Positions 732 through 43,100 of a stretch of 64,000 nt of DNA are shown piece after piece. Position 1 is the stretch's first letter, and each line of letters begins with the position of its first letter. Under the pieces are notes generated by a model. The model ran no database searches, was not told where the DNA came from, and was given only the letters and a program-made list of their open reading frames with translations. The position numbers and the translations under genes were made by a program. The stretch lies in the IMG/VR virus record IMGVR_UViG_3300048571_000088, positions 124,001-188,000 of that record. One strand, given 5' to 3'.

Positions 732-2039
732 ATGATTGGAAAACCAAATATACATGCTACATGGGATAATATTTTCTCGATCATAGAGCATCATAAATCG
801 ACTAGCAAAAATGATTTTCCTTTGTTATCGCCAGACCAAGAAATTGTACAGCCTAGTCTGAGTGCAGGATCAATAGCCACTGTAAGTCCGCTCAGTACAT
901 CTTCAGTATCAATACCAAACATAAAGAAGAAAGTATCTTCTATCGCGGGCGCCACCATATTAGCAGCCTCTGGGTTACTAGGTTTTGCCTCTCATTCTAA
1001 TATAGGGTTACTTAGTGCTGCAAGAGAAGCACCTGTCGTACTTCCAGTAGTCACTAAAATAAGTGACACTGTAAAAACTGGAAAAATAACTACTCCGACT
1101 ACTAGTAAAGCTTCGATTGTGAATCTAAGTGCCACAGAAGCCACGAAGAATGCTCCTTCTGTTCGATACGAAAACAGACTTATAGGTACCCCAGAGCAAA
1201 TTAATAATCTAGGTGCAAAAGGGATTCTAGACCTCTTTCAGACGTCAGGTAACTACCAAAATAATCTAGGTATACACTTAATGAGTCCAAAAGGAATAGA
1301 TAGTCAAGTAATAAAAGACTTAGCTGACCAGACCTCACAACAAGTAAGATACTACGATGATGACCAATTGCAAGTTTGGTTTAACCCTCAAGGGGAAGGA
1401 GGTGTATTTAAGTACTCAGAGAAAGATAAAAAGAATCACAGGGTAAACAGTACTATATATACATCTGATAAGTACAAACCTTTGACGCAGCGACCTTTGA
1501 CTACAACAACACAAACGCCTTGGATGGAGCATGTGGAGAAACTAGTCAATCAAGTATCCGAGTCAGGAATGGCCTCACTTGAAGAAGGAACAAACAATAG
1601 TCTCGAGATTTCCGATATGCTGAAGACCGTACATCTTAAATCAGGAAATGAGTGGTGCGGCGCAACAATTGGGTACGGTTTTTCTAGAGCTGGGATAACT
1701 CCTCACAAATCAGGTGCTATTAGTTTAGCATGGAGAGGATTCGGAACAAAACTAGATCGTCCAGCCATCGGTGCAATTGCAACATACCCACATGGAAAAG
1801 GAAAAGGCCACGCTGGATTTGTAAAAGGCTTTGTAAAAGGATCTACAAGTAAGCTTGTACTTGTAGGTGGAAATCAACTTGACACAGTCAACTACATGGT
1901 AAAAGATATTGCAGACTTAAAATTCAATTACCCCTCAGGTTATAAACCAGAATACAATCTTCCGTCTTACTCGGTACCTAACGACACCAATACATTTATG
2001 TTTACAGATTTACCGACAGAAGAACAGGGAGGGAGGTAA
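732..2039 (+). CDS. Virion-associated peptidoglycan hydrolase with C-terminal TIGR02594 (NlpC/P60-CHAP-like) domain
   Basis: TPWM...WCGATI...AWRGFGTKLDRPAIGAIA...GHAGFV...GGNQ, with catalytic Cys and His present. The N-terminal part has a hydrophobic segment. RBS AGGAG. Confidence 0.8.
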   Translation: MIGKPNIHATWDNIFSIIEHHKSTSKNDFPLLSPDQEIVQPSLSAGSIATVSPLSTSSVSIPNIKKKVSSIAGATILAASGLLGFASHSNIGLLSAAREAPVVLPVVTKISDTVKTGKITTPTTSKASIVNLSATEATKNAPSVRYENRLIGTPEQINNLGAKGILDLFQTSGNYQNNLGIHLMSPKGIDSQVIKDLADQTSQQVRYYDDDQLQVWFNPQGEGGVFKYSEKDKKNHRVNSTIYTSDKYKPLTQRPLTTTTQTPWMEHVEKLVNQVSESGMASLEEGTNNSLEISDMLKTVHLKSGNEWCGATIGYGFSRAGITPHKSGAISLAWRGFGTKLDRPAIGAIATYPHGKGKGHAGFVKGFVKGSTSKLVLVGGNQLDTVNYMVKDIADLKFNYPSGYKPEYNLPSYSVPNDTNTFMFTDLPTEEQGGR

Positions 2040-4784
2040 TGAATTTAAATCAGCTAGCTGCAGAAGGAATCAACCAAGGCGTAAGTACTAGTAAGATACA
2101 AGAAGCTCTAGTTTATCTTCAACACCATCCTGAATTAGCCTATCAGGTACAGTCCCTAGTTGATTCTTATTCTAAAGCGACTGAACTTTATGAAAAGAAC
2201 GGCAACAAGAAGGCAGAGAAAGTAAAAGAGATCTCTCATGTCTCACAAGGAAGTACTGAAAGTCTAACTCATGACTTTTCTTATGGTTTCGACAAACTGC
2301 CTAAACCAGGAACGGAAGACAAAACCGAACTAGCCAAAGTAGCTGAGACGGCGTATCCTCCTGTTTCTGATAGGGGTTTCCCTAATCCTTTCGATGCTAC
2401 TCGGAGAAGTCGATAACGCAGCAGCTATAGAGGCAATCGCACAACCTTTGTTCTCGGAAAATAAAACAATAAGTACTAATCCACTAGGTGTGTATAACCA
2501 TGTAGAAACACCTAGTAAACCTTCTTTTGAGTTGTCTTATCAATCTTCTTATACAAGTCGTGATAACACTAAAAAGAATACAATACAAACGTTTAATAAA
2601 GATCAACTAACTTTTAACTTAAATAGTAAAGACGAATCTTTACCAAGTTTTACTTTATCTTCTGAACCTAAAATTCTTACTAACAGTCCGAAAATCAATT
2701 CAGTACAGATATTTAACAAGGATCAGATTACTTTTGACCTTAATTCTGAAATAGAAACTACTAGACAAAGTGTATACAACGAACCAACAAAGTTACCTGT
2801 ATTCAAAGATGTTACAGGTACAACACCAAAAGCTACTAATCTAGGTGCAGGGACAGGTTTTACATTTGGTACTAAGTTTACTGTACCTACTGAAAAGAAA
2901 GCTCAAAACCAAGAAAAAATAGTAGAAACTCCGACAGAGATAAGTGATACACCTAATAGATATTCTTTAAGTGTATATTCTAATACAGATCCTCTAGCGA
3001 GTTCTAAACAAAAAGCAAAACAACTAGTAGATGCTTCTAGAGCTTCTGTGTCTACTCCAAGAGCTAAAGTCTCTCTTATTAGAACAGAAGAGAAAACTAA
3101 GAAACAAAAAACTCCAGCCTCTAGCACACCTTCTGTACCTAAGCCTATCATAGCTCCTGTTCAAGTTATTCCTCCTGTAGCTCCAACTGCAAGACAAACC
3201 TATAACGGACTACCTAAAGCTAACTTATTTTCTTATGACACTGAGACAACAGGTGTAGATTCAACTAAAGCAAAAATATGGCAGCAAGGATATGCAAGTA
3301 GAGATTACGCTACCGGTACATGGAGCGGAGGAGACGTACATAGCGATCCGTTTAGCGGTAAGATAAAATCAAAGAAAGAGTTTGAAAAGGCTTTAGCTGA
3401 ATCGAACGGAAAGTTCTCTCAAGATGCAGCCAAGAAAGGGAACTTCAAAGAGATTGTAAAAGATTTTGGTAAGAATAATCTAGTAAGTGTAAGAGAAGGT
3501 CTCGAGCAAACATTAGGTAAAGTAACTAATGGTTCTATACTTGTGATGCAGAATATAAACTTTGAGAACAGCATGTTAAGAGAAGCATACAAAGCTGATC
3601 TACTAGACAATAAAAGATATAAAGAGCTTCAAGAAAACATGATGTTCTTGAGCGCAGATAAGAAATTAAATACATATAGTAATGAATTATTCCAACGACC
3701 TTTTGAAGTACAGGAGTACATGAGGTCAGCAGATTACACATTCACTACTAAGTTTCTTCCTTTCCGTAGTGATGCTACTTTCAGTACCTATGTATCAAGT
3801 TTAAATTCGGCTTTCGATTCTTACGATTCAATCTTAAAGAATCTAACACACACTAGTAAAATTCCTGTAGTAGAGTTAATGGACATATCTAAAATATTTC
3901 TAGGTAACTTAGCTGCAAATAATCTAATAGAAAAAGAAACATCAACTACTGGACTTACAGTTGATTTCCTCACTCAAGCATTCTTTGGAAGAAAAGAAGC
4001 ACACACTGCCGCATCAGATTCTAAGGATACATTAGAACTGTTTGAAAGTATGTATACACATATAAATAATATGCGCTCTGGGAATATAACGCCCGAATTA
4101 AAACAGCTTGCTACTAGGATATCAGCATTCCAACCAGACGAAGTAAACAGAAGATTCATTAGTGGCCTTTCATCCACTATTACAGACTTTACAACAAGAG
4201 GTCACACAAAACTACGAGGTACTAGTAATAGATACTATGGAGGTGCTATAGACGTTTACGATACAGAAAATAAAACTGTATCCCGTTCAAAAAGTATTAG
4301 TATCGGTGTAAAAAATAGAAATACAACTGATGTTGTAAAAGCTCTAAGAGAAAGAGTAGAATCGTTCGCAAAAACATTTCAAGATAATATTGCAGGCTTT
4401 AACAGGGAATCTTTTGTACAAGAATTGATTCAGGATTTTGATCCTGACAAACCCGACTACGACGCAATGCTCAAGAAAGTACAAGCTACTCAAGATAAGC
4501 TACAGCACACAAGAAATGTAGACCTACCTAAACCACAAACCAGTAGTGATATCATAGTTAAAAAAGGAGCTTTTGTTGAATCAACATTTAATAAAGGTAC
4601 GAAAACTTGGATAGGATTAGCAGCTTTCGCAGGACTCTCGGCGATGGCAGTAACTATTGCACCAAAAAAACAAAAAGAAGATAAAAACAAAGACCTTCCA
4701 GTCTACTCTAACTTCTATGATGAACAATATTTAGGCTCAGGTTTTGTAGATTTCCGAGACCGTAACAAGAGGTACATGTACTAA
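2039..4784 (+). CDS. Large protein (~914 aa) with DEDDh 3'-5' exonuclease domain; needs a +1 shift at CGG 2402
   Basis: ORF 2039 has a strong RBS (GGAGG) and reads ...GCT ACT CGG AGA AGT CGA TAA. Skipping one base gives GGA GAA GTC GAT, the frame of ORF 2394..4784. Exonuclease motifs: YDTETTG, QNINFE, AHTAASD. There is a C-terminal hydrophobic helix. Confidence 0.7.
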
Positions 4785-31900: not shown

Positions 31901-34900
31901 ATGGCATTAACAACAAAAGGTAAGTTTATATTAGGTTCTGTTGCCGCAGGTGCTTATGCAGGCGACATTACAGATGACCCTCTTAGTGGTGTGCTAGGAG
32001 GTACTGTACTCGGTTTAACAGCATCTGCAATGAAGTTGAGTACTTCAGACATAATTGAAAGTGGTAAGGTTGTTAATAGCTTCAATCTAGATATGGATAA
32101 GATTAATAAGGATCGTAACTCTGGGTACAACAAAAGAGACTTAGAAGCTTTAAATACATTGAAATCCCGCATGAAAGGATTTGAAACCAGAAAAGCTAAA
32201 ATACCAGAGTTACAAGACAGACTTACTGAACTTCAGGAAGGAATTGTAGCTGGAAAATCTAAGAGTACCGAAGAGGCAAGAGCACAAAAAAGACTAGGGT
32301 ATAAAATACTAGCGTTAGAAAACAAGATTGCTCAGTACAGTGATTCTGGTCTTGATGTTATGGCCTCTAAAGTCGCTGATGAACTTAAGATTGCTGGTAC
32401 TATAATAACTCCAACTTACGAGGGATTAAAGAAACATGCAGAAGGGATAACAGACCCTAGAGTAGCTAGAAGATTAAATAGTGCTCTAAGCGGAGCAAAA
32501 GCTTACCAAGGCGTAGTGATTCACGATATAGTTACAAAATATCCTGATACAAAAACTGTAATATCACTATCTAAGGGAGGTGCTGAAGATCGCTTAACTA
32601 TGGCGTTGGCAACACAATTAGGTAATACACCAGAAGTAGCACGAGAAAAATCTAAGTTAATCCTAGACCGTGTTCTTGGAGATACTATAACACTGCAAGG
32701 ACACAACTTAATCTTCACAGATAAACGAGAAGGTGCTCCTACTGTCGTCTTACCTATGACTGCTGAGACTAAAGAAGGAGTTATGTATCACTCACCCAAC
32801 AATGGTACTCATTTTGCTGTCGCCGGTGTAAATCCTTATACAGATGCATATGCAAGAGGAGTAGAAGTTGATATAAAAGGACAAGGTGGTGGAAGACGTG
32901 TCCCGACACTTCAAGACGCTACAAAAAGAATACACCCTGAACTATTAGCTCTCCAGTTGTACGAAGGTGCTGATATCACTCAAGGGATTGAAATGATTAA
33001 GCAGAATCTAAGGCATGACCCTGATTCTGTTGCACTAGAGACTGAAAGTTTAGATGGACGATTAAAAGATCAGCATCTAAATCAGAAGTTTAGAAACGCA
33101 GGAATGTCATTAAACTTAGAACACATACTAAACACAGACAATACAGGTCTTACTGATCCTGATCAACCACTAACAAAAATAAAGAGAATCAGTACACAGG
33201 TAGGGACATCCTCTCAACTTAAAAGTACTATGCTTGCTCTTCAAGAAGGATTAGGAGGTGATGCTGTTAATATGTATTCAGGGTTATCACTGAACACCAC
33301 TACCAGCATATCAAACTCTAATTTTAATTCTCTAGCTCCGTTAAACATGAATCAACGTGGTGCTACAGCCGTAGGTGTAAGAGATACACAAGTTAAAAAC
33401 AGATCTGATGCTTTTAAAAGACTACAAGCTATGTATGGCAGTGATTTTGACAAACAATTTGAAAGTAGTAATGTATTTAGTAAACTAGATATTGCAGATA
33501 AAGAGGGGTTTAATGCTGTAATCGGAAATATCTTAGGGAATGATTACGCCCTCTCTGATGGAGCTGGATTATTTAATGTTAAAAATTCTCATCTATTTGA
33601 GCATGGTAGTGCACAAAAGCTTACTATAACATCTCAAAGAAATGGTGACTTCTTGATTAAGAATGAAACTATAAAAGACATGTTCAATATGTATAATAGT
33701 ATGTTGGACAGTAAGCACACTACGTCCACACTAAATCCTCAATTTATGGAGACATATCAGAAAGCAAGAGGACTCCTTAATTATAATGAACTCTTACTAA
33801 CTAAGAAGAAAAAAGGGTTTATACAAGATCCTTTAGACTTAGACCAACTATTTACAGATATTAAAAAAGGTACATATGACCAGTACCTAACGGCAAGTAA
33901 GAGACATCAGCCTAGTTTCAAAATAAGTAGTGGAGAAGCCATAGGATTAGACGGAGAAGGTAGAGAAATCTCGCTACACAATCAATTCTCCGAAGGCACT
34001 ATGAGAGAATTAGTAGTTGACAGGTATGGTAATCTTGGCATACATGTAGATGCAAGATTTAACCCAGGCGAAGAAAAAATAGCTAAACTATTCTCAGAAT
34101 CTGCTAAGTCTAACTTATACGGAGCTAAAGATTACCGACATGCTGCAGTAATAGGTACTCTACTAAACAGTGGAGAAGTTTCTGTAGTAGGTAATGAATT
34201 ATATATACCTACTCCAAATGGAGGTCCAAGTAAAAAGGTAGATAAGAAAGATATAGACAAGCTTGTAACGAACATAGAAGAAAAGATTGCTAAGAATATA
34301 CCTCTTAACTCTTTAGAGAAACGACTTAACTCTGCAATGAAAAGTAGTGTAATCTTAGCAGCCGAAGATACTAATTTTAAAGATTTTGCTCAACTAAATA
34401 AGGCAGGTGATATCACTGGCATTTTGGACTTTATAGATGGAAAGAAAATAAAAAGAAAAGTTGAACACTCTGACACAGAAAGACAATACATCAAAGATTT
34501 TGCTGAGAAACATGGAGGTGGGTTTCACAACTTAAGACGTTCAGCTATCTCATCGTTTATGAATAGTAATTTCAAAGCTGCGACAGATATATCTACAACT
34601 ATCGCCTCAGACATCTTTAAGAACTTAGAAGATGTTCTTTCAACTGGAGGTACTAAGGAGCAGAAACAATCCGTTGAGGAAATGTTAAGACATTTAAAGA
34701 TGATGAAAGACACTGATACTATTGAAGACGTTATAAATAATACTGAAGAGATGAAGGATTACTATAAGAGGAGAGTAGGAGGTACATTTAGAGCCGCTAC
34801 TATTGCTAGTAATTTAGTAGGTACGAATAGGGTGATGCACGAAGACAATATGATGGGACTCCTTAAAGGATTAACTAATACTAATTTTACAGATTATGCC

Positions 34901-37114
34901 TACGGACTTACAAACACAGCGGGATCTGTTAACAAAGGTCAGGCTGCACTAGGAGTAGGAAACCAGGCAAGACTGTCATGGACTGCACAAGATCAATTAC
35001 TTCAATCAGGTTTTACAAAAGAACAATTAAAAGTGATAGGTACCCCCGAACACAAAACATTAGTAGAGTTGGAGTCCATACTCGGAGAGAGGAATACAGG
35101 AATAGGTAAAAGACACAACAGGTACAGTATTAACTCTCAACTTAATGATACTAACCAAACAGACTTTGAAGCTATTCTTGTACGAACAACACCAGAAGAC
35201 CGACTAGGAAAACTTAAGCAAATCGGAATAGAGATCAGTGATAAATCACCCTTTATTACTTACGAATTAAAAAATCCATATAAAAAGATAGAGAGACTTA
35301 ACTTTGCTACAGTGTCTACAGACCGTAGTGGATTCTTTGAAGCTCACGAATTAGAGTTACTAAAAGAGATTGAAAGTAAGAAACTTCAATTATTTCATAT
35401 GGATAATTTACTATCAGTAGCGCCAGATAAAGATAGAGCTAAGACAAAACTAGAATTTGATAAAGTAGCGGAAGAGTATAAAACTCTAACTGAATCTACA
35501 CTGAAAGGTAATAATTCACTACTAAAACGTGCTGCATCTCTTCAAGTAGATGCAAGTAATATCAGCTTAGCGAGATCAACAGGAGGTGAAGCTTCTAGGT
35601 ACATAGAGTCAAGACTTGCAGAACAAAAAACTACTATTGCTGATTCAGTATTTATAAGTCAAGAAGGGTTGGATCTACGTTTAAAAAGAATGGGTGTTAC
35701 TAAGCAAAATACAAGAGTAGTAGATATACCTGCATTTCCGTCCTTAAAGAGGATTGAATACTTTAATGAAGACGCGTGGGTACCATTAAAGTCCTTAATC
35801 ACAAGGGAGCCATCTCAAGGTCCACTATCAACTACATTTGAAAATTTAGTTTTAGATACGTCAATTAAACAGTCTGGGAGTGGTGCGCACCTATATGTAA
35901 CCGAGAATCACAGAGGTTTCTTAACAGGTAAGTACATGGACTTCGACCAAGATACCTTACAAGAGTTGTTTCCTAAGCTAACATCTGCTCAGACACAAGA
36001 GCTGGAAACAAGATTTAAAGGTATTAATACAGCCCTTACAGAGATGGTAGATGCACATCAATACTTAAAAGTAAAAGGGTCGAATCATATAACTGCAACT
36101 ATAAGAGACTTTAAAGATACTGAAGAGTTAGCTTCTTATTTAAATGCTGCAGCATTACAAGGAAGGGAAAGGAAAGCTCTTGCTGCTCCCTCTACAGCAC
36201 TAGCCGTAGACTTAGCATCAGCATTTAATATGGAATTTGAAAAGACAGACGGAAAATCTATAAAAGGTCGCTTCTTAGGTCATACACTAGTTGAAAACTT
36301 AATTAAATCTGCTCATTTAGATACAAAAGCTTATAAAGAACAAACCGAGTCTGATATTGAAGCCTTCAGTAGACTTCATCGTGCCTATGTAAGTAATAAG
36401 ATCAGTGCTAAAACCTATGAAGAAGGTATCAGACCTCTTATTAAGCGACAACTAAACTTAGATAAAGTAGAAGCTGGACTTACAGATGCAAAACCAGAAC
36501 AAGTTAAAATGTTACTGGATTCACAGGAAGACCTAATACGTGCTACTGTAAATCATTCTAAAGAGGTTGCATCGACAGCAAGAAATCCACTTCATGTTAC
36601 TCAAGGTGTTGGACATGGCGATCTAATAGAAAGATCAATAGATGCTTTATCACAATTCGTAGAGACAAGTCAAGGATTAGATTTGAGAGGAGGAGAAAGT
36701 TATGGTAGAATGGCTCGTGAGATTAGTGTTAATATAGCAAAGACTATTAAAAATAATAAGGGTATCTTAGGTGTAGGTGCAGGAGCTTTGTTCTTAGCAT
36801 CAATGATGACTAAGAGTGGAGAGGGTGGTTCTCCAGATACAGAAGCTATTAATACTGAGAGATTTGTTCGATCAGATGCTTCTAAGAACCTCAGACCTTA
36901 TAATCAAGTACCTAATGCTATAGAGACAAACAAGCAAGCAAGAGCTTATGTTACTCCTAAAAACCATACAAAACAAAGTACTTCTGTGGAAGTTCAAGGT
37001 GGTTTTACAGAAGCAATGCAGTACGGAGACATGAATACGTATGCAGATCAAGCTAAGAGTATATCAGATGCTATCTTCGGAGATAGTTTAAGAACTGCAA
37101 GATTTGAAAATTAA
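31901..37114 (+). CDS. Large virion protein, candidate single-subunit two-barrel RNA polymerase
   Basis: LSDGAG (33551-33568), KLFSESAK (34085-34108), ITREPSQGP (~35798-35824) and YMDFDQD (35933-35953) occur in the order expected for the two DPBB barrels; hydrophobic Gly/Ala termini. Confidence 0.55.
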   Translation: MALTTKGKFILGSVAAGAYAGDITDDPLSGVLGGTVLGLTASAMKLSTSDIIESGKVVNSFNLDMDKINKDRNSGYNKRDLEALNTLKSRMKGFETRKAKIPELQDRLTELQEGIVAGKSKSTEEARAQKRLGYKILALENKIAQYSDSGLDVMASKVADELKIAGTIITPTYEGLKKHAEGITDPRVARRLNSALSGAKAYQGVVIHDIVTKYPDTKTVISLSKGGAEDRLTMALATQLGNTPEVAREKSKLILDRVLGDTITLQGHNLIFTDKREGAPTVVLPMTAETKEGVMYHSPNNGTHFAVAGVNPYTDAYARGVEVDIKGQGGGRRVPTLQDATKRIHPELLALQLYEGADITQGIEMIKQNLRHDPDSVALETESLDGRLKDQHLNQKFRNAGMSLNLEHILNTDNTGLTDPDQPLTKIKRISTQVGTSSQLKSTMLALQEGLGGDAVNMYSGLSLNTTTSISNSNFNSLAPLNMNQRGATAVGVRDTQVKNRSDAFKRLQAMYGSDFDKQFESSNVFSKLDIADKEGFNAVIGNILGNDYALSDGAGLFNVKNSHLFEHGSAQKLTITSQRNGDFLIKNETIKDMFNMYNSMLDSKHTTSTLNPQFMETYQKARGLLNYNELLLTKKKKGFIQDPLDLDQLFTDIKKGTYDQYLTASKRHQPSFKISSGEAIGLDGEGREISLHNQFSEGTMRELVVDRYGNLGIHVDARFNPGEEKIAKLFSESAKSNLYGAKDYRHAAVIGTLLNSGEVSVVGNELYIPTPNGGPSKKVDKKDIDKLVTNIEEKIAKNIPLNSLEKRLNSAMKSSVILAAEDTNFKDFAQLNKAGDITGILDFIDGKKIKRKVEHSDTERQYIKDFAEKHGGGFHNLRRSAISSFMNSNFKAATDISTTIASDIFKNLEDVLSTGGTKEQKQSVEEMLRHLKMMKDTDTIEDVINNTEEMKDYYKRRVGGTFRAATIASNLVGTNRVMHEDNMMGLLKGLTNTNFTDYAYGLTNTAGSVNKGQAALGVGNQARLSWTAQDQLLQSGFTKEQLKVIGTPEHKTLVELESILGERNTGIGKRHNRYSINSQLNDTNQTDFEAILVRTTPEDRLGKLKQIGIEISDKSPFITYELKNPYKKIERLNFATVSTDRSGFFEAHELELLKEIESKKLQLFHMDNLLSVAPDKDRAKTKLEFDKVAEEYKTLTESTLKGNNSLLKRAASLQVDASNISLARSTGGEASRYIESRLAEQKTTIADSVFISQEGLDLRLKRMGVTKQNTRVVDIPAFPSLKRIEYFNEDAWVPLKSLITREPSQGPLSTTFENLVLDTSIKQSGSGAHLYVTENHRGFLTGKYMDFDQDTLQELFPKLTSAQTQELETRFKGINTALTEMVDAHQYLKVKGSNHITATIRDFKDTEELASYLNAAALQGRERKALAAPSTALAVDLASAFNMEFEKTDGKSIKGRFLGHTLVENLIKSAHLDTKAYKEQTESDIEAFSRLHRAYVSNKISAKTYEEGIRPLIKRQLNLDKVEAGLTDAKPEQVKMLLDSQEDLIRATVNHSKEVASTARNPLHVTQGVGHGDLIERSIDALSQFVETSQGLDLRGGESYGRMAREISVNIAKTIKNNKGILGVGAGALFLASMMTKSGEGGSPDTEAINTERFVRSDASKNLRPYNQVPNAIETNKQARAYVTPKNHTKQSTSVEVQGGFTEAMQYGDMNTYADQAKSISDAIFGDSLRTARFEN

Positions 37115-37128
37115 ATAAAAGGTGTAAG

Positions 37129-40100
37129 ATGACAGAAACAATTATTACAAAAGAATCATTCATTATAAATGACATAGTACTTGATGTTAATCCTAGTGAT
37201 ATTAGATTAATCGAAGATAACTATGCTATGCAAGATAGTTATATACGTACAAATGCAGTTTTTGCATACAGATCAAAATATGCATCTACTAAGATTTCTA
37301 TAACTATCCCAGTAGAACTAGATGACATGATGCTAAATAACTTTGATCTGTCATCTTACGAATACAGTGGGAATTATAGTAACATACCTAATACGTTAAA
37401 ACTGTTAGTACAATTGTGTAACTATCCTTTCTGTTTTATTAAGTCAAACAGAGTACAAACCTATGTAACACCTACTTCTATTTCTTCTACTAATTTCATG
37501 ATCTTCGCTATAGACGAAATGAATCTTATGTTCAGATCTGAAGTTTCTAATGTTGCTTTCTTAGAGTTAGTCATTTGCTACTACAATCATACACCATTTG
37601 TAAAAGACTTTAGTTTTAGTAAAACAGTTTCAATGGTAGAGTACTCTTCTTACGATGCTTTTAAATTTAAAAGTGAAGGGATTCAAAACTCAGGAGTACC
37701 ATACCTAGGAGAGAGCGAGTCTTGGAAGAGATATTTCTTAAAAATTATGACTGATATTAGAGATCTAAGTACGATAGAGTCTTTTAAGTTAGGTTCAGAA
37801 GTTGTACAAGAGTTGTTTAATACTTTGAGAGTCCAGATTGCTGTACCAAACGTTACTTCTGTAACTGCAGACAGTATAGAGGAACTAGGGCATCAATATG
37901 GAAATGAAGCGAAATTCGTGATCACCACTAATGTTGACCCACTGAATGCTGATATATTACAACAACTTTACGCAGATAAAAAAGATGGTCAAGACTTTAG
38001 TCAACTATTGAAACAAACCGATCAAGATAGCAATGGGAAGAGTGCTTGGGAAACCTATACAAAAGTAAAAGGTGTAATTACTTATGACGATGTATTAAAA
38101 GCAATAGATGAAAAAGCATCTGATCCTATGGGGGAGTTCTACTCTAGAAATAAATTATTTGTTATTGAGTGGGCAGATATGGACTTAGAGTTATTAAGAA
38201 TTAGTGTCCAGTCTATAAGTATTAGAAAAAAGAATAAACTAGCTAGTAATCATATAGGTTCCTATAAGTATCCAGTGATCCAGTACATGGGAAGGTACCC
38301 AACAGAAGTAGCGATACAATTCACTACGAACGTTGGAAATTCTTATCTCGAACAGAGTGGGGAAATCGGTCTTAGCTCTTTCATTAAGAATCAATTCAAC
38401 ATCCTAGATAGAAACAGAACAATGTATCCAGAGATGTTGGCTCATAACTACCTTAAAATTAAATCGTTAGGTACTATATTTAGTCAGAATATTCAATACA
38501 TCCCTAATCAGTACCATCTAAGCGCTAATTCAACCGAGCAAGGACTTGAAACATTTAATTGTACTTTTATTGAAAGCAATCTAGAGTCTTTACTAGAGCT
38601 AGGTGAAATGACAAACTCTGGTAAAAAATCTACAGGAGAGCAAGAGGGATTTACTCACGACGTAGTTATTAAGTTTCTTACTGACCTATCTACTTACTTA
38701 TCAGATCGAAAAAATGCAAGTAAACTAAGTAACGAAGAGAAAAGTTACATCCTAGAGATTTACTATAAGTGTTTATTACTAGTTAATATGTACCGAGTGG
38801 AGGCAGGCAGTAAGTCCGTACTTGAAACAACTCTGTCAACACTTCCTCTTTCGGAGTTAGAACAATTTCTTGCATACGCTCTTGCTAAAATATCTTCTCA
38901 GTTGTTTCAAGACCTTGTAGCAGGAACTGCAGCAGTCGCAACGGCAGCAGTAGTGGCCTTTTTCTCTGTATTTAGCGCAGGTACGACTTTAGGCCTTGCG
39001 ATTCCTGCCTCGGCAGGTGGGTATTGGCTAGCTAATGAAGCTATGGAGGTTGCAGGTATCAACGCCAACCCTTATTTCTATAGTACAGTATTTGAAGGAC
39101 TTGTTCCGTCAGAGGTACTTGAATATCACGTCAACTGGATATCAAACGGTGCAAAAGGTGGTCTTATTGAAAATATTAAAGCAAGAAAGTTAATTGTTAC
39201 AGGAAACGGGAAGGTCATACAGGAGAATATTAATAACTATGTAAGTTTTATATTCAGAGAAAGAGGTGAAACTAAAATCCTTCTTAATGAAATTGTAGGT
39301 ATGATTGCAGTAGGTAGTGGAAAGAATAATCAACTATGTAAATCAGTAACTGATGCATATGCTGAAAAATTTGCTGCCGGATTTGACACTAGTATTGTTA
39401 CTTTTACAGGTCAGGCTATACCAGATTTAAACTTACAAACGATACACCCAGACTACAAAGAAGCTTCAGATTTAGCTGTGCAATCATTAAATCCTTTTTT
39501 CTTTTTAGTAGAAAACAAATGGTTTAATGATTCAGAAATTAAAGATACCTTTTCTGTTATTACAGATACCACTCAAGCTATTGAACAAAGCCTAGGTGCT
39601 GCTATAACAGAAATTGTCAGTGAAGACAAATCAAATATTAATCCAGCTATTGAAACTAGAGGTAGGTTAAAATACACTGAACCCGTCGAAGCTAAGTATG
39701 TAATCGACACAGAACAAGAAGCTCTTTCTTCAGTCGGAAATGCAGTAGGAGTAACTAATGATGTACCTACTAGTTCTTCTACACTCCCTGCCACAACCGG
39801 AGCAAATGATATAACCTCTTTAGCTGATGTACCAGTAGATAGTAATAAAGATGAATTGTTAGCACACTACAGTACAGCTAGATCTACTGGATTACGTCTC
39901 TCTGAGCAAGATTGGCTACTGTTTGCCAATACAGTAGCTTTCTATGAAAGTAGAAATAGAACAAATATAGTAGGAGGAATGAATAATCACTTCTTAGGTA
40001 AGTATCAAATGGGTGATATGGCTCTATTTGATATTGGATTTTTAAATAAGAAAAGTCCTAATTCAACTACATTAAGTGGCGCTTGGACAGAAACAGGATT

Positions 40101-43100
40101 AAACAGAGAAGTATTTCTAAACAGTCCTTCAAAACAAGCAGAAGCATTTGCTAAGTATGTAGCAAAGAATTATACATATGTAGCAAATAACTTCAAGAAA
40201 GAAGGTCTTCCACAATTCTCTTCATTACCTCTTAAAGTCCAATTAGCTTGTCTCGCAGCAGCCCATTTTGGACATACTTATGCTGTTCCTGTCTACAGAG
40301 ATCGTTCTAATCCTTCAGGGACTAAATCATTACTTTATTATGATAAGATCTTATTAGTGTTTCAAGATAGAAATGCATCGAGTACTACAAACAAATCAAC
40401 TACGCAGCCAATACAAAAAGCTGTATTCGTAGCTGTATTGAGTTGCAATGAGTTCAGAGCAAAACTATCTGACGGTACTGTGAAAGATTATCTAATAGAA
40501 GGGACGATAGATCCAAGACAAGCAACTAATGTAAAGAAATTAAGTGCAGGGCAATCATTTGATAAGTTACAGAATCTTTTCCAGTCAACAATGAATCTTT
40601 ATAAAAATCTTCAAATACAAGAGACAGGATTTACAGCACCACCAAATAAGAAGACAATTGTTAAAGTATTTACAGATAAAGGTCTTAGTCTTAACCTTAC
40701 AGTTTTGAATCAAGGTTATGCAGTACTTGATCCTGCGTATGAAGGAGTTTCTGGTTATCTAAATGCAAGCGACTCTGCAAAAGATAATAAAAAAGGATTG
40801 TATTCAGCCGACTTAGTATCTACCTTACCTTCTAAAAGTTTAGTATCCGCTGACGAAACAACATCAAGAGTATTCTCTGAAGCGGAACTTAACAAATACA
40901 GGAAAGTAACTCAACTGTACAATAGTAAAACTGATATAGGTTACATCCTCTCCCCACCTCAAGTACCATTTAAAGATAAGTCAGTAAAATATAAAATATC
41001 CTCTGGATTTGGTGCTAGAAGTGGAAGTCCTAACGGACATAGAGGAGTGGATGTAGTAGGACAAGGATTTAGTATTCTTGGCTCGCATGTGCAGCCGACT
41101 GCTAGTGGTACTGTAGTTTTTGCTGGAGTAAGAGGTGCTTATGGTAATGCAGTTTTTATTGATCATGGTAATGGATACACTTCAGCTTATGGACACTTAA
41201 ATAGTATCAATGTTAAAACAAACTCAGTCGTAAAAGGACTAGAGACTGTTATAGGTACAGCAGGAAGTACAGGTAGGTCAACTGGCCCTCACTTACACTA
41301 TGAAATCTCCTACAAAGGAACAAGAATAAATCCTAAAGATGTAACTGACTTACAAAAACTTGTAGGAAATTCTGGCGGGTACTCTACAGAGAAACTACAA
41401 AGCTATGAAACTAATGTAGGTCTAGGAGGTCAGATTACAAATCCTAAGCGATTTGTTGATACAGTAGCTATTAACAATAATAGCACTAGCATATACGACG
41501 AGGGTTTGTGGGTTTCTAGATTTTCTGACATGCTGGCTAAAAATATAAACAGAGGGTTGTCTCAGTCTTTTCCTACTATTAAGGTGTACGCCACTGTAGG
41601 TAACGAAGATCAGGATTTCTTTGTTGGTCTTCAAGGCTCTCAAATACAGTACTACGAAATCAAAGGTGTTCGTGATTTTCATTTAACAACTAATAACTCT
41701 GAGAACCCTGTAGATGTAGTTAGTATGATCATAGCTGATCCAAACTTTCTTAAAACTGACGAAATGACAGCCTTAGCTAATAATCCAGTCATAGACTATA
41801 AGAGTATAGGTACAGACTATGAAACTAAATTCAAGAATAATAGATTACAACTAAAGCCAGGAATGAAACTACACATAAGAATGGGATATTTTAACAACCC
41901 AAATAAGTTAGATATTGTATTCAATGGTTCTGTAACTAGTTGCTATAATGTTCATACTAATGCTATTCAAGTAATTGCAGAAGGATTCGGCAAAGAGTTA
42001 CTTTCAGAGATAATAGGTAGCAACGAGCCTAAACGACTAGGTGGAGGATGGAATAGCTCAACTGGTTCTATTTTTGCTGACTTAATGGTTTATCCAAGTC
42101 TGTACCATTTTGGGAAAAGTTATTCTTTCGGCCGTATGCTATTTGAAGGGTCACTAGGAGATCAACTCGATCCTGAATCTAAGAGTTTGTTAGCGTCTTC
42201 CACAAGTATCTTACAAACAAGTTACAAACGTGATGATATGAGTGACGGCGTATTCAATAGTAATTATTACCTAGGATTTAAACTGTTTAACAATATTATT
42301 CAACGTTCGCGTGTTAACACTAATATTTATGCGGCAGATATAGAGCACGTAGATAGTCAATTTGACTCACCTATTGTTAATCTATTTTCTAATATATTAT
42401 CACCAAATAAACCTGTTACTTATGATTACTATGCTGTAAATGAAACTCCTTGGGACGTTATGAAGCAAATGGAGCACAGACATCCAGGAACAATAGTGAA
42501 ACCAATGTGGTATCAAGACAGGTGTACTTTATTCTACGGTATTAAAGAGCAATTATATATCGCTAGAGACACTAATATGACATTAATGAGTCTTACAGCT
42601 AAAGATTTAATTGATAATGAAGATTGGGGAGTAGATAAACAATCTAACATTAAAGATGCTTACTCAACTTACAGAGATGAGAGAATGGATCCCGCATTCA
42701 ATTTCCACCTCGTAAGTTCAGAGTTTAATATGATTAGTAATGGAATAAAACTGAATGCTGACTATTTTACTAAAGTATCTGTAGGTTACAGAGATGATGA
42801 TGATGATATCTCTAATAAGAGTGCATGGGAGACACTCCCAATGATGTTAGATGATAACCTAGCTGCATGGGAGATACGCGGATCTGAACTAACGATGAGC
42901 GGATGTGATCATCGTTACATGGCGTACCGTTACGGGACTAATTTCCTAATAAAAGAAGCCGAAAAGATGTATGACGGAAAGATTACATTACTAGGTAATC
43001 CATCTATGAAGGCTGGTGACTATGCATTTATAAATGATACTTCGAGAAAAATGTACGGTGTTGTAAAGATAAGAGAGTGCTTTCATCACTACGATGAACG

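What the first reader, a model, noticed from the sequence alone, without database searches (positions are those of the whole stretch)
31901..37114. Candidate virion-packaged single-chain two-barrel RNA polymerase with a DFDQD active site
Seen: LSDGAG, then K-x6-K, and far downstream an R-E-P motif 45 codons before D-F-D-Q-D. Established: two-barrel polymerases (beta/beta', YonO, crAss-like virion RNAP, eukaryotic RdRP) use a DG motif and two Lys in one barrel, and RxP followed by DxDxD in the other. Inference: an ejected RNAP encoded between the tape-measure-like and hub genes, with hydrophobic ends suited to passage through the tail or membrane. Gln in place of the usual Gly in DFDGD is unusual.
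Basis: partly seen in the sequence, partly recalled or inferred. Interest (0 to 1): 0.8.

Follow-up and report, generated by a model that had tools for sequence, protein, structure and literature searches.

The report
Tail-module two-barrel RNA polymerase, jumbo phage
A 1737-residue gene between the tail-assembly genes and the baseplate hub of a 243-kb phage encodes a previously unannotated single-chain RNA polymerase of the cellular (two-barrel) type, probably carried in the virion to start transcription on infection.

Summary
ORF 31901-37114 (+) encodes 1737 aa with LSDGAG (aa 551), K729-x6-K736, R1302-E-P and D1347-F-D-Q-D exactly 45 residues later.

The motifs alone are not significant: D.D.D appears in 32% of shuffles. 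Conservation and fold carry the case.
- In 59 homologues (18-45% identity), R1302, P1304 and all three Asp are 59/59. K729 and K736 are 58/58. D553 is 56/59.
- These are the eight universal residues of two-barrel RNA polymerases.
- AlphaFold2 of aa 480-1480 gives pLDDT 92 and pTM 0.90.
- An unbiased scan of 48,161 PDB chains ranks only RNA polymerases in its top 13. Both barrels align to QDE-1/RDR2, P74-26 gp62, P23-45 gp96 and crAss phi14:2 gp66.
- Gln at the fourth motif position is not constrained (Q, A, Y, G, F occur).

Pfam, PHROGs and PDB sequence searches find nothing. The only cultured homologue, Acinetobacter phage ME3 gp36, is annotated hypothetical.

In all seven contexts examined the gene lies between a gp145-like virion protein and the M23 hub. 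Hydrophobic helices at both ends are conserved.

I put the polymerase assignment at about 0.9. Virion delivery rests only on position, end features and precedent (P23-45 gp96), about 0.6. I rate it a new variant of a known kind.

The parts
31901..37114 (+). Whole gene, 1737 aa (P0001): single-chain two-barrel polymerase with hydrophobic ends
   Evidence: ORF list and translation. 59-member family.
31913..32029 (+). aa 5-43: two Gly/Ala-rich hydrophobic helices (predicted H5-20, H27-43)
   Evidence: Hydropathy. AF2 N-terminal model. 49 of 58 members have KD19 >= 1.0 in their first 70 aa, against an internal background of 0.30.
32090..32488 (+). aa 64-196: helical, coiled-coil-like region
   Evidence: AF2 helices 65-196. 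Only coiled-coil matches in the PDB.
32543..33280 (+). aa 215-460: confident alpha/beta N-terminal domain of unknown relation
   Evidence: AF2 blocks with pLDDT mostly >90. No clear PDB match.
33338..36340 (+). aa 480-1480: polymerase core containing both barrels
   Evidence: AF2 pLDDT 92.1, pTM 0.90. QDE-1 Z 11.6 over model 1-995. Top 13 of 48,161 PDB chains are all RNA polymerases.
33467..34126 (+). aa ~523-742: beta/Rpb2-like barrel (DPBB-B) with a ~176-aa insertion
   Evidence: Model 1-541 aligns to Pol I subunit 2 residues 708-1044 (Z 7.9) and to bacterial beta. Strands at model 76-97 and 195-263.
33551..33568 (+). LSDGAG, with D553-G554 as counterpart of Rpb2 D837 / QDE-1 D709
   Evidence: D553 56/59, G554 57/59. 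Universal residue list from PMC2919709.
34085..34108 (+). K729-LFSESA-K736: the two basic residues of the beta-like barrel
   Evidence: Both Lys 58/58. E. coli beta reads GDK1065-MAGRHGN-K1073, i.e. K-x7-K.
35552..36007 (+). aa 1218-1369: beta'/Rpb1-like barrel (DPBB-A)
   Evidence: Isolated DPBB domains (Cdc48-N, PEX1-N, designed DPBB 7dww) align to model 739-890, Z 7-8.5.
35804..35821 (+). R1302-E-P-S-Q-G
   Evidence: R 59/59, P 59/59, E 56/59, G 57/59. 45 residues before the first Asp, as in QDE-1 (R962 to D1007). The distance is 35 in E. coli beta'.
35939..35953 (+). D1347-F-D-Q-D: metal-binding triad
   Evidence: Three Asp 59/59, fourth position variable. A profile of the barrel aligns it to beta' ADFDGD 459-464, but not significantly.
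36119..36316 (+). aa 1407-1472: long helix with invariant R1424-K1425, then E1465/K1469/H1472. Candidate bridge helix and start of the trigger loop.
   Evidence: Helices at model 928-966 and 972-989. Invariant residues. beta' alignments end near residues 931-935 at model ~990. Assignment is inferred.
36752..36820 (+). aa 1618-1640: C-terminal hydrophobic segment NNKGILGVGAGALFLASMMT
   Evidence: Hydropathy. 56 of 58 members have KD19 >= 1.0 in the last 170 aa. N1619 is invariant.
37070..37102 (+). aa 1724-1734: conserved C-terminal tail motif A-[IV]-F-G-D-x-[LI]-R-x-A-R
   Evidence: Alignments A1 and A4. C-terminal sequences of all members.
27655..31882 (+). Upstream neighbour: ME3_35 / 0305phi8-36 gp145-like virion protein, here two ORFs (889 + 526 aa) with an SNase insertion
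   Evidence: Pfam SNase. BLASTP to ME3_35, L004 and L005.
37129..44130 (+). Downstream neighbour: baseplate hub, 2333 aa, with M23 peptidase
   Evidence: Pfam PF01551 E 8.7e-24 and phrog_8809. ME3_37 is annotated baseplate hub.

Best explanation
The gene encodes a single-chain two-barrel nucleotidyl polymerase, most likely a DNA-dependent RNA polymerase.

Active site. It forms between two barrels.
- The beta-like barrel supplies D553, K729 and K736.
- The beta'-like barrel supplies R1302-x-P1304 and the Mg-binding triad D1347/D1349/D1351.
- A long helix follows (invariant R1424-K1425), then E1465/K1469/H1472. These are the likely bridge helix and trigger-loop start.
This part rests on conservation and fold. 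I put it at about 0.9.

Delivery. The gene is fixed in the late tail operon of ME3-like jumbo myoviruses, immediately upstream of the hub, and it carries conserved hydrophobic helices at both ends. I infer the following sequence:
1. The protein is made late and built into the tail, in the tube lumen or on the hub.
2. It is expelled ahead of the DNA on sheath contraction.
3. It is anchored at or near the membrane channel by its ends.
4. It transcribes the first phage genes independently of host polymerase.
The precedent is P23-45 gp96. I put this part at about 0.6.
For: 1. The eight universal two-barrel residues (PMC2919709) are all present and invariant or nearly so in 59 homologues at 18-45% identity.
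2. The AF2 model of aa 480-1480 is highly confident: pLDDT 92.1, pTM 0.90.
3. Foldseek against the PDB returns only beta'/Rpb1/A' subunits and QDE-1 in its top 50.
4. VIA-align gives QDE-1 Z 11.6 and maize RDR2 Z 10.8 across both barrels, and beta'/Rpb1 Z ~10 over the C-terminal half.
5. The unbiased scan of 48,161 chains ranks only RNA polymerases in its top 13.
6. That scan includes phage AR9 and phiKZ nvRNAP, P74-26 gp62 (Z 9.8), P23-45 gp96 (Z 7.9, 17% identity) and phi14:2 gp66 (Z 7.7). Pol I subunit 2 and bacterial beta match the N-terminal half.
7. BFVD and AFDB agree: AFDB cluster A0A0F9QJZ1 'DNA-directed RNA polymerase' covers model 4-992 at E 1e-7, and BFVD lists NCLDV polymerase subunits.
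8. Synteny sheath, tube, chaperones, ~1300-1900-aa protein, this gene, hub is kept in the window, ME3, L004, L005/L006, L012 and L013.
9. Hydrophobic end segments are conserved: 49/58 at the N-terminus and 56/58 at the C-terminus.
10. ME3 has no annotated RNA polymerase. No other large ORF there carries [RK]xP..DxDxD in a plausible setting. An enzyme made only with late structural genes is useful early only if it is carried into the next cell.
11. Precedent: the P23-45 tape-measure-fused virion polymerase transcribes pre-early genes (PMC10770324).
Against: - There is no virion proteomics, no transcription data and no enzymology for any member.
- No sequence-level link exists to any known polymerase family. 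Pfam, PHROGs, PDB phmmer and profile searches find nothing. A barrel profile aligns only the DFDxD pentapeptide of E. coli beta', and not significantly.
- Structural Z-scores of 8-12 are moderate for a 1000-residue model.
- A ~110-kDa globular core cannot pass through a tail tube while folded.
- The positional counterpart in 0305phi8-36 (gp146, the putative tape measure) has no DxDxD and does not match the family.
- The best structural matches are RNA-dependent enzymes (QDE-1, RDR2), so template specificity is open.
Confidence: 0.65

Rival explanations
1. It is an active two-barrel RNA polymerase but is not packaged. It would be a non-virion enzyme made during infection, for late or middle transcription, that merely happens to be encoded in the tail operon.
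For: There is no proteomic evidence of virion association. The core is a large globular fold that would have to unfold to travel through a tail. P23-45 and phiKZ-like phages also have non-virion two-barrel polymerases, and P74-26 gp62 (a non-virion enzyme) is among the better structural matches (Z 9.8).
Against: The position between a gp145-like virion protein and the hub is invariant in seven contexts. Hydrophobic helices at both ends and a conserved C-terminal tail motif have no role in a soluble cytoplasmic polymerase. Non-virion polymerases of other phages are encoded among early or middle genes.
Confidence: 0.2
2. The same fold performs a different chemistry. It could be an RNA-dependent RNA polymerase, a primase-like enzyme that makes primers for the incoming genome, or a PolD-like DNA polymerase.
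For: The top structural matches across both barrels are QDE-1 and RDR2, and RdRP clusters dominate AFDB ranks 4-29. PolD also uses two DPBBs (PMC10770324).
Against: QDE-1 is itself also DNA-dependent (PMC9508822 abstract). According to PMC10770324, the phage single-chain enzymes that group with the RNAi polymerases are transcribing enzymes: P23-45 gp96 transcribes pre-early phage genes, and phi14:2 gp66 is deposited as a DNA-dependent RNA polymerase (6vr4). From my own knowledge YonO is DNA-dependent too. PolD does not appear among the top 50 matches. ME3 encodes its own DNA polymerase and primase/helicase.
Confidence: 0.08
3. It is a structural tape-measure or tail-lumen protein whose polymerase-like fold is a catalytically dead relic.
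For: It occupies the position assigned to the tape measure in 0305phi8-36, one gene removed from the chaperonins and just before the hub (PMC2147016). A weak Atlas feature lead points to a T4 tape-measure cluster for the C-terminal 257 aa (score 0.71).
Against: Every catalytic residue is invariant over a family that has otherwise diverged to 18-25% identity. That pattern indicates selection on catalysis. No tape-measure Pfam family matches any of the 58 C-terminal regions or the whole protein. About 1250 of the 1737 residues are predicted with confidence as compact alpha/beta domains, not an extended helix.
Confidence: 0.04
4. The motifs are a chance pattern in an unrelated protein.
For: Shuffles give D.D.D in 32% and the composite pattern in 5-8% of sequences of this composition.
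Against: Conservation and fold.
Confidence: 0.01

Closest known systems
Thermus phage P23-45 gp96, tape-measure-fused virion RNA polymerase (PDB 8H2M/8H2N; PMC10770324)
   Same: Single-chain two-barrel polymerase encoded in the tail module next to the tail-tip or hub genes. Associated with hydrophobic segments. The structural match covers both barrels (Z 7.9, 274 residues, 17% identity, model 1-995). The proposed role is the same: transcription of the first genes as the DNA enters.
   Different: gp96 is the N-terminal ~1200 aa of a 5002-aa tape measure of a non-contractile tail, and it carries the metallopeptidase in the same chain. Here the protein is 1737 aa with no long tape-like part, the tail is contractile (sheath gene), and the M23 peptidase sits in the next gene, the hub. 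No sequence similarity is detectable. The motif is DFDGD there and DxD[variable]D here.
Eukaryotic RNAi polymerases QDE-1 (PDB 2J7N, 7Y7R) and RDR2 (7W82)
   Same: These are the best structural matches across both barrels (Z 11.6 and 10.8). The R-to-first-Asp spacing is the same, 45 residues (QDE-1 R962/D1007).
   Different: They are cellular RNA-silencing enzymes. The Asp-to-basic-residue spacing in the first barrel is ~30 aa in QDE-1 (D709, R738, K743) against 176 aa here. Sequence identity over aligned residues is 10-12%.
crAss-like phage phi14:2 gp66 virion RNA polymerase (PDB 6VR4)
   Same: Virion-delivered single-chain two-barrel polymerase embedded in a large multidomain protein. The structural match covers model 3-993 (Z 7.7).
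   Different: It belongs to a podovirus-like crAss phage, is 2180 aa (from my own knowledge), and is not encoded next to a contractile-tail hub. No sequence similarity is detectable. It ranks lower than QDE-1 and gp62.
P74-26 gp62 / P23-45 gp64 non-virion RNA polymerase (PDB 8F5M)
   Same: Phage single-chain two-barrel polymerase. Z 9.8 over model 1-993.
   Different: It is small (~600 aa), non-virion and early-expressed, with no hydrophobic ends.
0305phi8-36 gp146 (putative tape measure) and the YonO-like polymerase of the same phage
   Same: gp146 occupies the same genome position in the only other described relative of this lineage and is a virion protein by mass spectrometry. It has a hydrophobic segment ~110 aa from its C-terminus and an FGD near the end, as this family does.
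   Different: gp146 has no DxDxD and does not match the family profile, whole or C-terminal. The resemblance at the C-terminus is anecdotal. The two-barrel polymerase of 0305phi8-36 (orf99 in PMC2147016; ABS83659.1 in PMC7824862) is a separate non-structural gene matching Pfam RdRP PF05183. P0001 does not match that family.

Membership tests
Two-barrel (double-psi beta-barrel) RNA polymerase superfamily | Two DPBB domains forming one catalytic core | tested here: met
   AF2 pLDDT 92.1. Isolated DPBB domains match model 739-890. beta/Rpb2-type subunits match model 1-541 and beta'/Rpb1-type match 586-995. QDE-1, RDR2, gp62, gp96 and gp66 match across both.
Two-barrel (double-psi beta-barrel) RNA polymerase superfamily | Invariant DxDxD in the beta'-like barrel, preceded by R-x-P 35-45 residues upstream | tested here: met
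   D1347/D1349/D1351, R1302 and P1304 are all 59/59. The spacing is 45, as in QDE-1.
Two-barrel (double-psi beta-barrel) RNA polymerase superfamily | Invariant Asp and two basic residues in the beta-like barrel (Rpb2 D837, K979, K987) | tested here: met
   D553 56/59, K729 58/58, K736 58/58. They sit in or next to predicted strands at model 76-80, 248-253 and 257-263. E. coli beta has K1065-x7-K1073.
Two-barrel (double-psi beta-barrel) RNA polymerase superfamily | The eight residues cluster around one metal site in three dimensions | not testable with these tools
   Model coordinates are not exposed, so only alignment ranges and secondary structure were available.
Two-barrel (double-psi beta-barrel) RNA polymerase superfamily | Bridge helix and trigger loop after the beta'-like barrel | tested here: inconclusive
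   There is a 39-residue helix with invariant R1424-K1425, then a helix with E1465, K1469 and H1472. beta' alignments run to residues ~931-935. The residue-level equivalence is inferred.
Two-barrel (double-psi beta-barrel) RNA polymerase superfamily | Template-dependent NTP polymerisation | not testable with these tools
   Needs enzymology.
Tape-measure-fused virion RNA polymerase (P23-45 gp96 type) | Polymerase domain in the same chain as a long tape measure with metallopeptidase and transmembrane regions | tested here: not met
   Only ~480 aa lie N-terminal and ~257 aa C-terminal to the core. Hydrophobic segments are present, but there is no long tape-like part and no peptidase. M23 is in the next gene.
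Tape-measure-fused virion RNA polymerase (P23-45 gp96 type) | Presence in virions and transcription of pre-early genes | not testable with these tools
   No proteomic or transcriptomic data exist for ME3 or for the metagenomic relatives.
crAss-like gp66 virion RNA polymerase family | Detectable sequence homology to gp66 | tested here: not met
   No PDB hit by phmmer or by the family profile at E <= 10. The resemblance is fold-level only (Z 7.7).
YonO / RdRP family (Pfam PF05183) | Match to the RdRP family model | tested here: not met
   No Pfam family reaches E <= 0.1 apart from three spurious sub-threshold hits.
Phage tail tape measure protein | Gene between tail chaperones and hub | tested here: met
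   Immediately upstream of the hub and one gene removed from the chaperone-sized ORFs, as for 0305phi8-36 orf146.
Phage tail tape measure protein | Predominantly extended helical protein, or a match to tape-measure families | tested here: not met
   The core and aa 215-460 are compact alpha/beta domains at high confidence. No tape-measure Pfam or PHROG hit.

The most novel reading that the evidence does not exclude
The polymerase is cargo of a contractile tail. It would be stored unfolded or metastable in the tube lumen in the place of, or together with, the tape measure, and docked to the hub by its conserved C-terminal tail. Sheath contraction would fire it through the envelope. Its two hydrophobic ends would then stay in the membrane channel while the core refolds in the cytoplasm and transcribes the genome as it is threaded in. 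That would be the first RNA polymerase delivered by a contractile injection machine. It would also explain how ME3-like jumbo phages, which have no other recognisable polymerase, start infection.
Probability: 0.35. Interest if true: 0.8.

Novelty: new variant of a known kind. Interest (0 to 1): 0.62.

Why it matters
The work assigns a function to a large conserved gene that is 'hypothetical' in the only cultured member (Acinetobacter phage ME3 gp36) and unnamed in every database cluster I examined.

It adds a new, sequence-unrecognisable family of at least 54 clusters at 50% identity to the two-barrel polymerase superfamily.

It extends the association of a polymerase with the tail module. So far that association is known from one group of Thermus siphoviruses. 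This finding carries it to contractile-tailed jumbo phages.

The jumbo-phage survey (PMC7824862) names double-barrel polymerases only for its group 1 phages and two group 3 phages, and ME3 is in its group 2.2. If I am right, the transcription strategy of this lineage has been misjudged.

The idea is directly testable, because ME3 and its laboratory host are available.

Tried and rejected
Searches and comparisons that found nothing:
- Pfam and PHROGs on the whole protein.
- PDB sequence search with the protein and with a 58-sequence profile.
- Megablast of 20 kb of the window against phage records. tblastn found only ME3.
- The family profile and a C-terminal profile against 0305phi8-36 gp145, gp146 and all ORFs of two 0305phi8-36 loci were not significant. 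I therefore dropped the idea that P0001 is a diverged gp146.
- Barrel sub-profiles against E. coli RpoB and RpoC aligned only the DFDxD pentapeptide, not significantly.
- Pfam on 58 C-terminal regions gave no tape-measure family. The Atlas lead to a T4 tape-measure cluster was weak (score 0.71) and unsupported.
- The Atlas search on the N-terminal 480 aa was uninformative.
- The fold search of the N-terminal model returned only coiled-coil matches.
With the single protein it returned only the window's own contig.
- The promoter and terminator scan around the gene gave fewer promoter-like sites than shuffles and nothing usable.
- A motif scan for a second polymerase in the window and in the whole ME3 genome found no convincing candidate.

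Supplement of PMC10770324: it has no entry for ME3. That table lists only viruses with two or more polymerases, so the absence says little.

Steps not run:
- Complex prediction. A hub trimer plus tail peptide exceeds the size limit, and the gp27-like part of the hub is not delimited.
- Read mapping, because a metagenome cannot show virion content.
Full report
**What is there.** The window is a 64-kb piece of a 242,588-bp metagenomic phage contig (IMG/VR UViG 3300048571_000088). All large genes lie on the + strand.
- The gene order is terminase (7618), portal (13122), major head protein (17375), sheath (22160), two tube paralogues (24231, 25052), small chaperone-sized ORFs, an 889-aa plus 526-aa pair, the 1737-aa ORF of the finding (31901-37114), and a 2333-aa hub with an M23 peptidase (37129-44130).
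- The only record in the phage collection with a homologue is Acinetobacter jumbo myovirus vB_AbaM_ME3. Its gp36 is 1603 aa, 25% identical and annotated hypothetical. It lies between ME3_35 ('virion structural protein', like 0305phi8-36 gp145) and ME3_37 ('baseplate hub').

**Check of the observation.**
- The conserved K-x6-K is K729-K736, 176 residues after D553.
- In one sequence the pattern is not significant. D.D.D occurs in 32% of shuffles and the composite pattern in 5-8%. Eight other ORFs of the window carry a D.D.D.

**Conservation.** A word-indexed search gave five homologues at 40-44% identity. An exhaustive HMMER search with aa 480-1480 gave 54 cluster representatives of 704-2096 aa (one, P0050, a fragment).
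- In all 59 sequences (the window's protein, ME3 gp36 and 57 database homologues) the three Asp, R1302 and P1304 are invariant. K729 and K736 are 58/58, D553 is 56/59 (plus 2 Glu) and G554 is 57/59.
- The fourth motif position is free: Q 29, A 8, Y 5, G 4, F 3 and others.
- Alignment A3 has a mean column identity of 15% and only 13 invariant columns. Five of them belong to RxP and DxDxD.
- These residues are exactly the eight listed as universal for two-barrel polymerases. In yeast they are Rpb2 D837, K979, K987 and Rpb1 R446, P448 with the Asp triad. In QDE-1 they are D709, R738, K743, R962, P964 and D1007/1009/1011 (PMC2919709).
- E. coli beta reads GDK1065...NK1073 and beta' reads R425-A-P...D460-FDGD.
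- Further invariant residues are G1018, S1026, R1101, K1209, K1392, R1424-K1425, E1465, K1469 and H1472 (57/59).

**Structure.** AlphaFold2 on aa 480-1480 with the 58-sequence alignment gave pLDDT 92.1 and pTM 0.90, a compact alpha/beta fold.
- Foldseek against the PDB returned only largest subunits of multisubunit RNA polymerases and QDE-1 in its top 50 (best E 9.5e-4).
- Re-alignment put QDE-1 first (Z 11.6, model 1-995 against chain 656-1121). T. terrestris QDE-1 (Z 11.2) and maize RDR2 (Z 10.8) followed, then beta'/Rpb1 at Z ~10 over model 586-995.
- A Foldseek-independent scan of 48,161 PDB representatives ranked only RNA polymerases in its top 13. These were AR9 nvRNAP beta', QDE-1, Pol II, Pol I (two entries), Pol IV, M. 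tuberculosis beta', P74-26 gp62, Pol III, phiKZ nvRNAP, vaccinia, an archaeal polymerase and RDR2.
- Lower in that list were Pol I subunit 2 and bacterial beta on model 1-541/585, P23-45 gp96 (Z 7.9) and phi14:2 gp66 (Z 7.7) across both halves, and isolated DPBB domains on model 739-890.
- BFVD returned ME3 gp36, then a 'minor tail protein' of an uncultured siphovirus (E 1.4e-9), then giant-virus polymerase subunits.
- AFDB returned beta' subunits, a 1052-aa 'DNA-directed RNA polymerase' cluster covering model 4-992 (E 1e-7), and RdRPs.
- The N-terminal half of the core is therefore beta-like, the C-terminal half is beta'-like, and both lie in one chain.
- The N-terminal 520 aa fold (pLDDT 88) into two hydrophobic helices (5-43), a coiled-coil-like region (65-196) and a confident alpha/beta domain (215-460) with no clear match.

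**Why sequence methods missed it.** Pfam, PHROGs, PDB phmmer and a PDB profile search find nothing. A barrel profile aligns only the DFDxD of E. coli beta'. This is the usual situation among two-barrel families (PMC10770324).

**Genomic setting.** The same order recurs in ME3 and in four further, distantly related kinds of metagenomic contig (L004, L005/L006, L012, L013). It runs sheath, two tube proteins, chaperone-sized genes, a 1260-1894-aa protein, this gene, the hub, then genes of about 240, 103, 135 and 377 aa.
- In Bacillus phage 0305phi8-36 the same slot holds gp146. It is 2537 aa, detected in virions, and was assigned as tape measure from tail length.
- gp146 has no DxDxD and no significant similarity to this family.
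- That phage encodes its RdRP-like polymerase elsewhere.
- ME3 has no annotated polymerase. A motif scan of its whole genome finds no second plausible two-barrel gene.
- Hydrophobic segments at both ends and a C-terminal A-[IV]-F-G-D-x-[LI]-R-x-A-R tail are conserved in the family.

**Mechanism.** Shown by computation: a two-barrel polymerase fold with a complete, strictly conserved catalytic set.

Inferred:
- It is DNA-dependent. P23-45 gp96 transcribes phage genes (PMC10770324) and phi14:2 gp66 is deposited as a DNA-dependent RNA polymerase. From my own knowledge YonO is DNA-dependent too. QDE-1 has both activities.
- It is made late with the tail.
- It is incorporated in or on the tail.
- It is released on contraction.
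- It transcribes the earliest genes.

The precedent is the P23-45 tape-measure-fused polymerase. The main unresolved difficulty is how a ~110-kDa core is stored and passed through a tube. For P23-45 the authors propose a flat, clamp-less shape. I could not assess whether this enzyme has a clamp.

**Classification.**
- It is not a member of the gp66, gp96 or YonO/RdRP (PF05183) families by sequence.
- It fails the gp96 architecture test: there is no long tape part, and the peptidase is in the next gene.
- It also fails the tape-measure tests other than position.
- I therefore call it a new family, and a new variant of the known kind 'virion or tail-associated single-chain two-barrel RNA polymerase'.
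- I found no paper that describes it. The jumbo-phage survey names double-barrel polymerases only for group 1 phages and two group 3 phages, while ME3 is discussed as a group 2.2 phage.

**Confidence.**

| Claim | Probability |
|---|---|
| Active two-barrel polymerase | ~0.9 |
| RNA polymerase acting on DNA | ~0.8 |
| Virion-borne and ejected | ~0.6 |

Noticed in passing
window 27655-31882 (+), junction at about 30302-30324: The 889-aa and 526-aa ORFs together correspond to one protein in relatives: ME3_35 residues 145-738 and 738-1259, and 1260-1894 aa in L004, L005, L012 and L013. Here a frame change splits it, and a ~350-aa insertion carries a staphylococcal-nuclease domain (aa 575-688). 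This could be a sequencing error, a programmed frameshift or a real split. I did not resolve which.
   Followed up: partly
window 37129-44130 (+): The hub protein of 2333 aa carries an M23 peptidase (aa 1303-1402, E 8.7e-24) and a weak SNase hit. It also has two strongly hydrophobic stretches (aa 580-613 and 2163-2216, KD up to 2.5), which is unusual for a baseplate hub. The hub of L013 carries SNase plus M23 as well.
   Followed up: partly
BFVD entry A0A8S5SD80_1 (Siphoviridae sp. ctnpt50), not in the window: A protein annotated 'minor tail protein' in an uncultured siphovirus shares the whole two-barrel core (Foldseek E 1.4e-9, 1110 aligned columns). Further tail-annotated polymerases may therefore be hidden in siphovirus genomes.
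   Followed up: no
ME3 record KU935715 187426-187638 (L010 35427-35639, - strand): ME3_243 is annotated 'baculo_LEF5_C superfamily protein', a TFIIS-like zinc ribbon. Such factors work with two-barrel polymerases, so it may be a partner of gp36. I did not look for a counterpart in the window.
   Followed up: no
L013 4307-9991: In one distant relative the gp145-like protein upstream of the polymerase (1894 aa) carries an intein (Pfam Intein_splicing, with a faint Hint_2 hit).
   Followed up: no
window 33557-34108 (aa 553-736): About 176 residues, helices and then five strands, are inserted in the beta-like barrel between the conserved Asp and the two Lys. This is the place where cellular beta subunits carry the flap domain. 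QDE-1 has only ~30 residues there. I could not tell whether the insert is flap-like.
   Followed up: partly
window 24231-24896 and 25052-25660 (+): Two paralogous tube-sized proteins after the sheath gene match phrog_9206, which PHROGs labels 'major head protein'. From their position, and from the tail tube and tube paralogue of 0305phi8-36, the label is probably wrong.
   Followed up: no
window 732-2039 (+) and 2394-4784 (+): A 435-aa protein with a tail-lysozyme/hub-like C-terminal part (phrog_1259, E 1.7e-12) lies upstream of the terminase. Next to it is a 796-aa protein with a weak DNA-polymerase-exonuclease hit and a DFDPD that has no RxP upstream.
   Followed up: no
ME3 record KU935715 104783-121042: ME3_104 is a single 5419-aa ORF next to tail-fibre genes. 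I did not check whether the window's genome has a counterpart.
   Followed up: no
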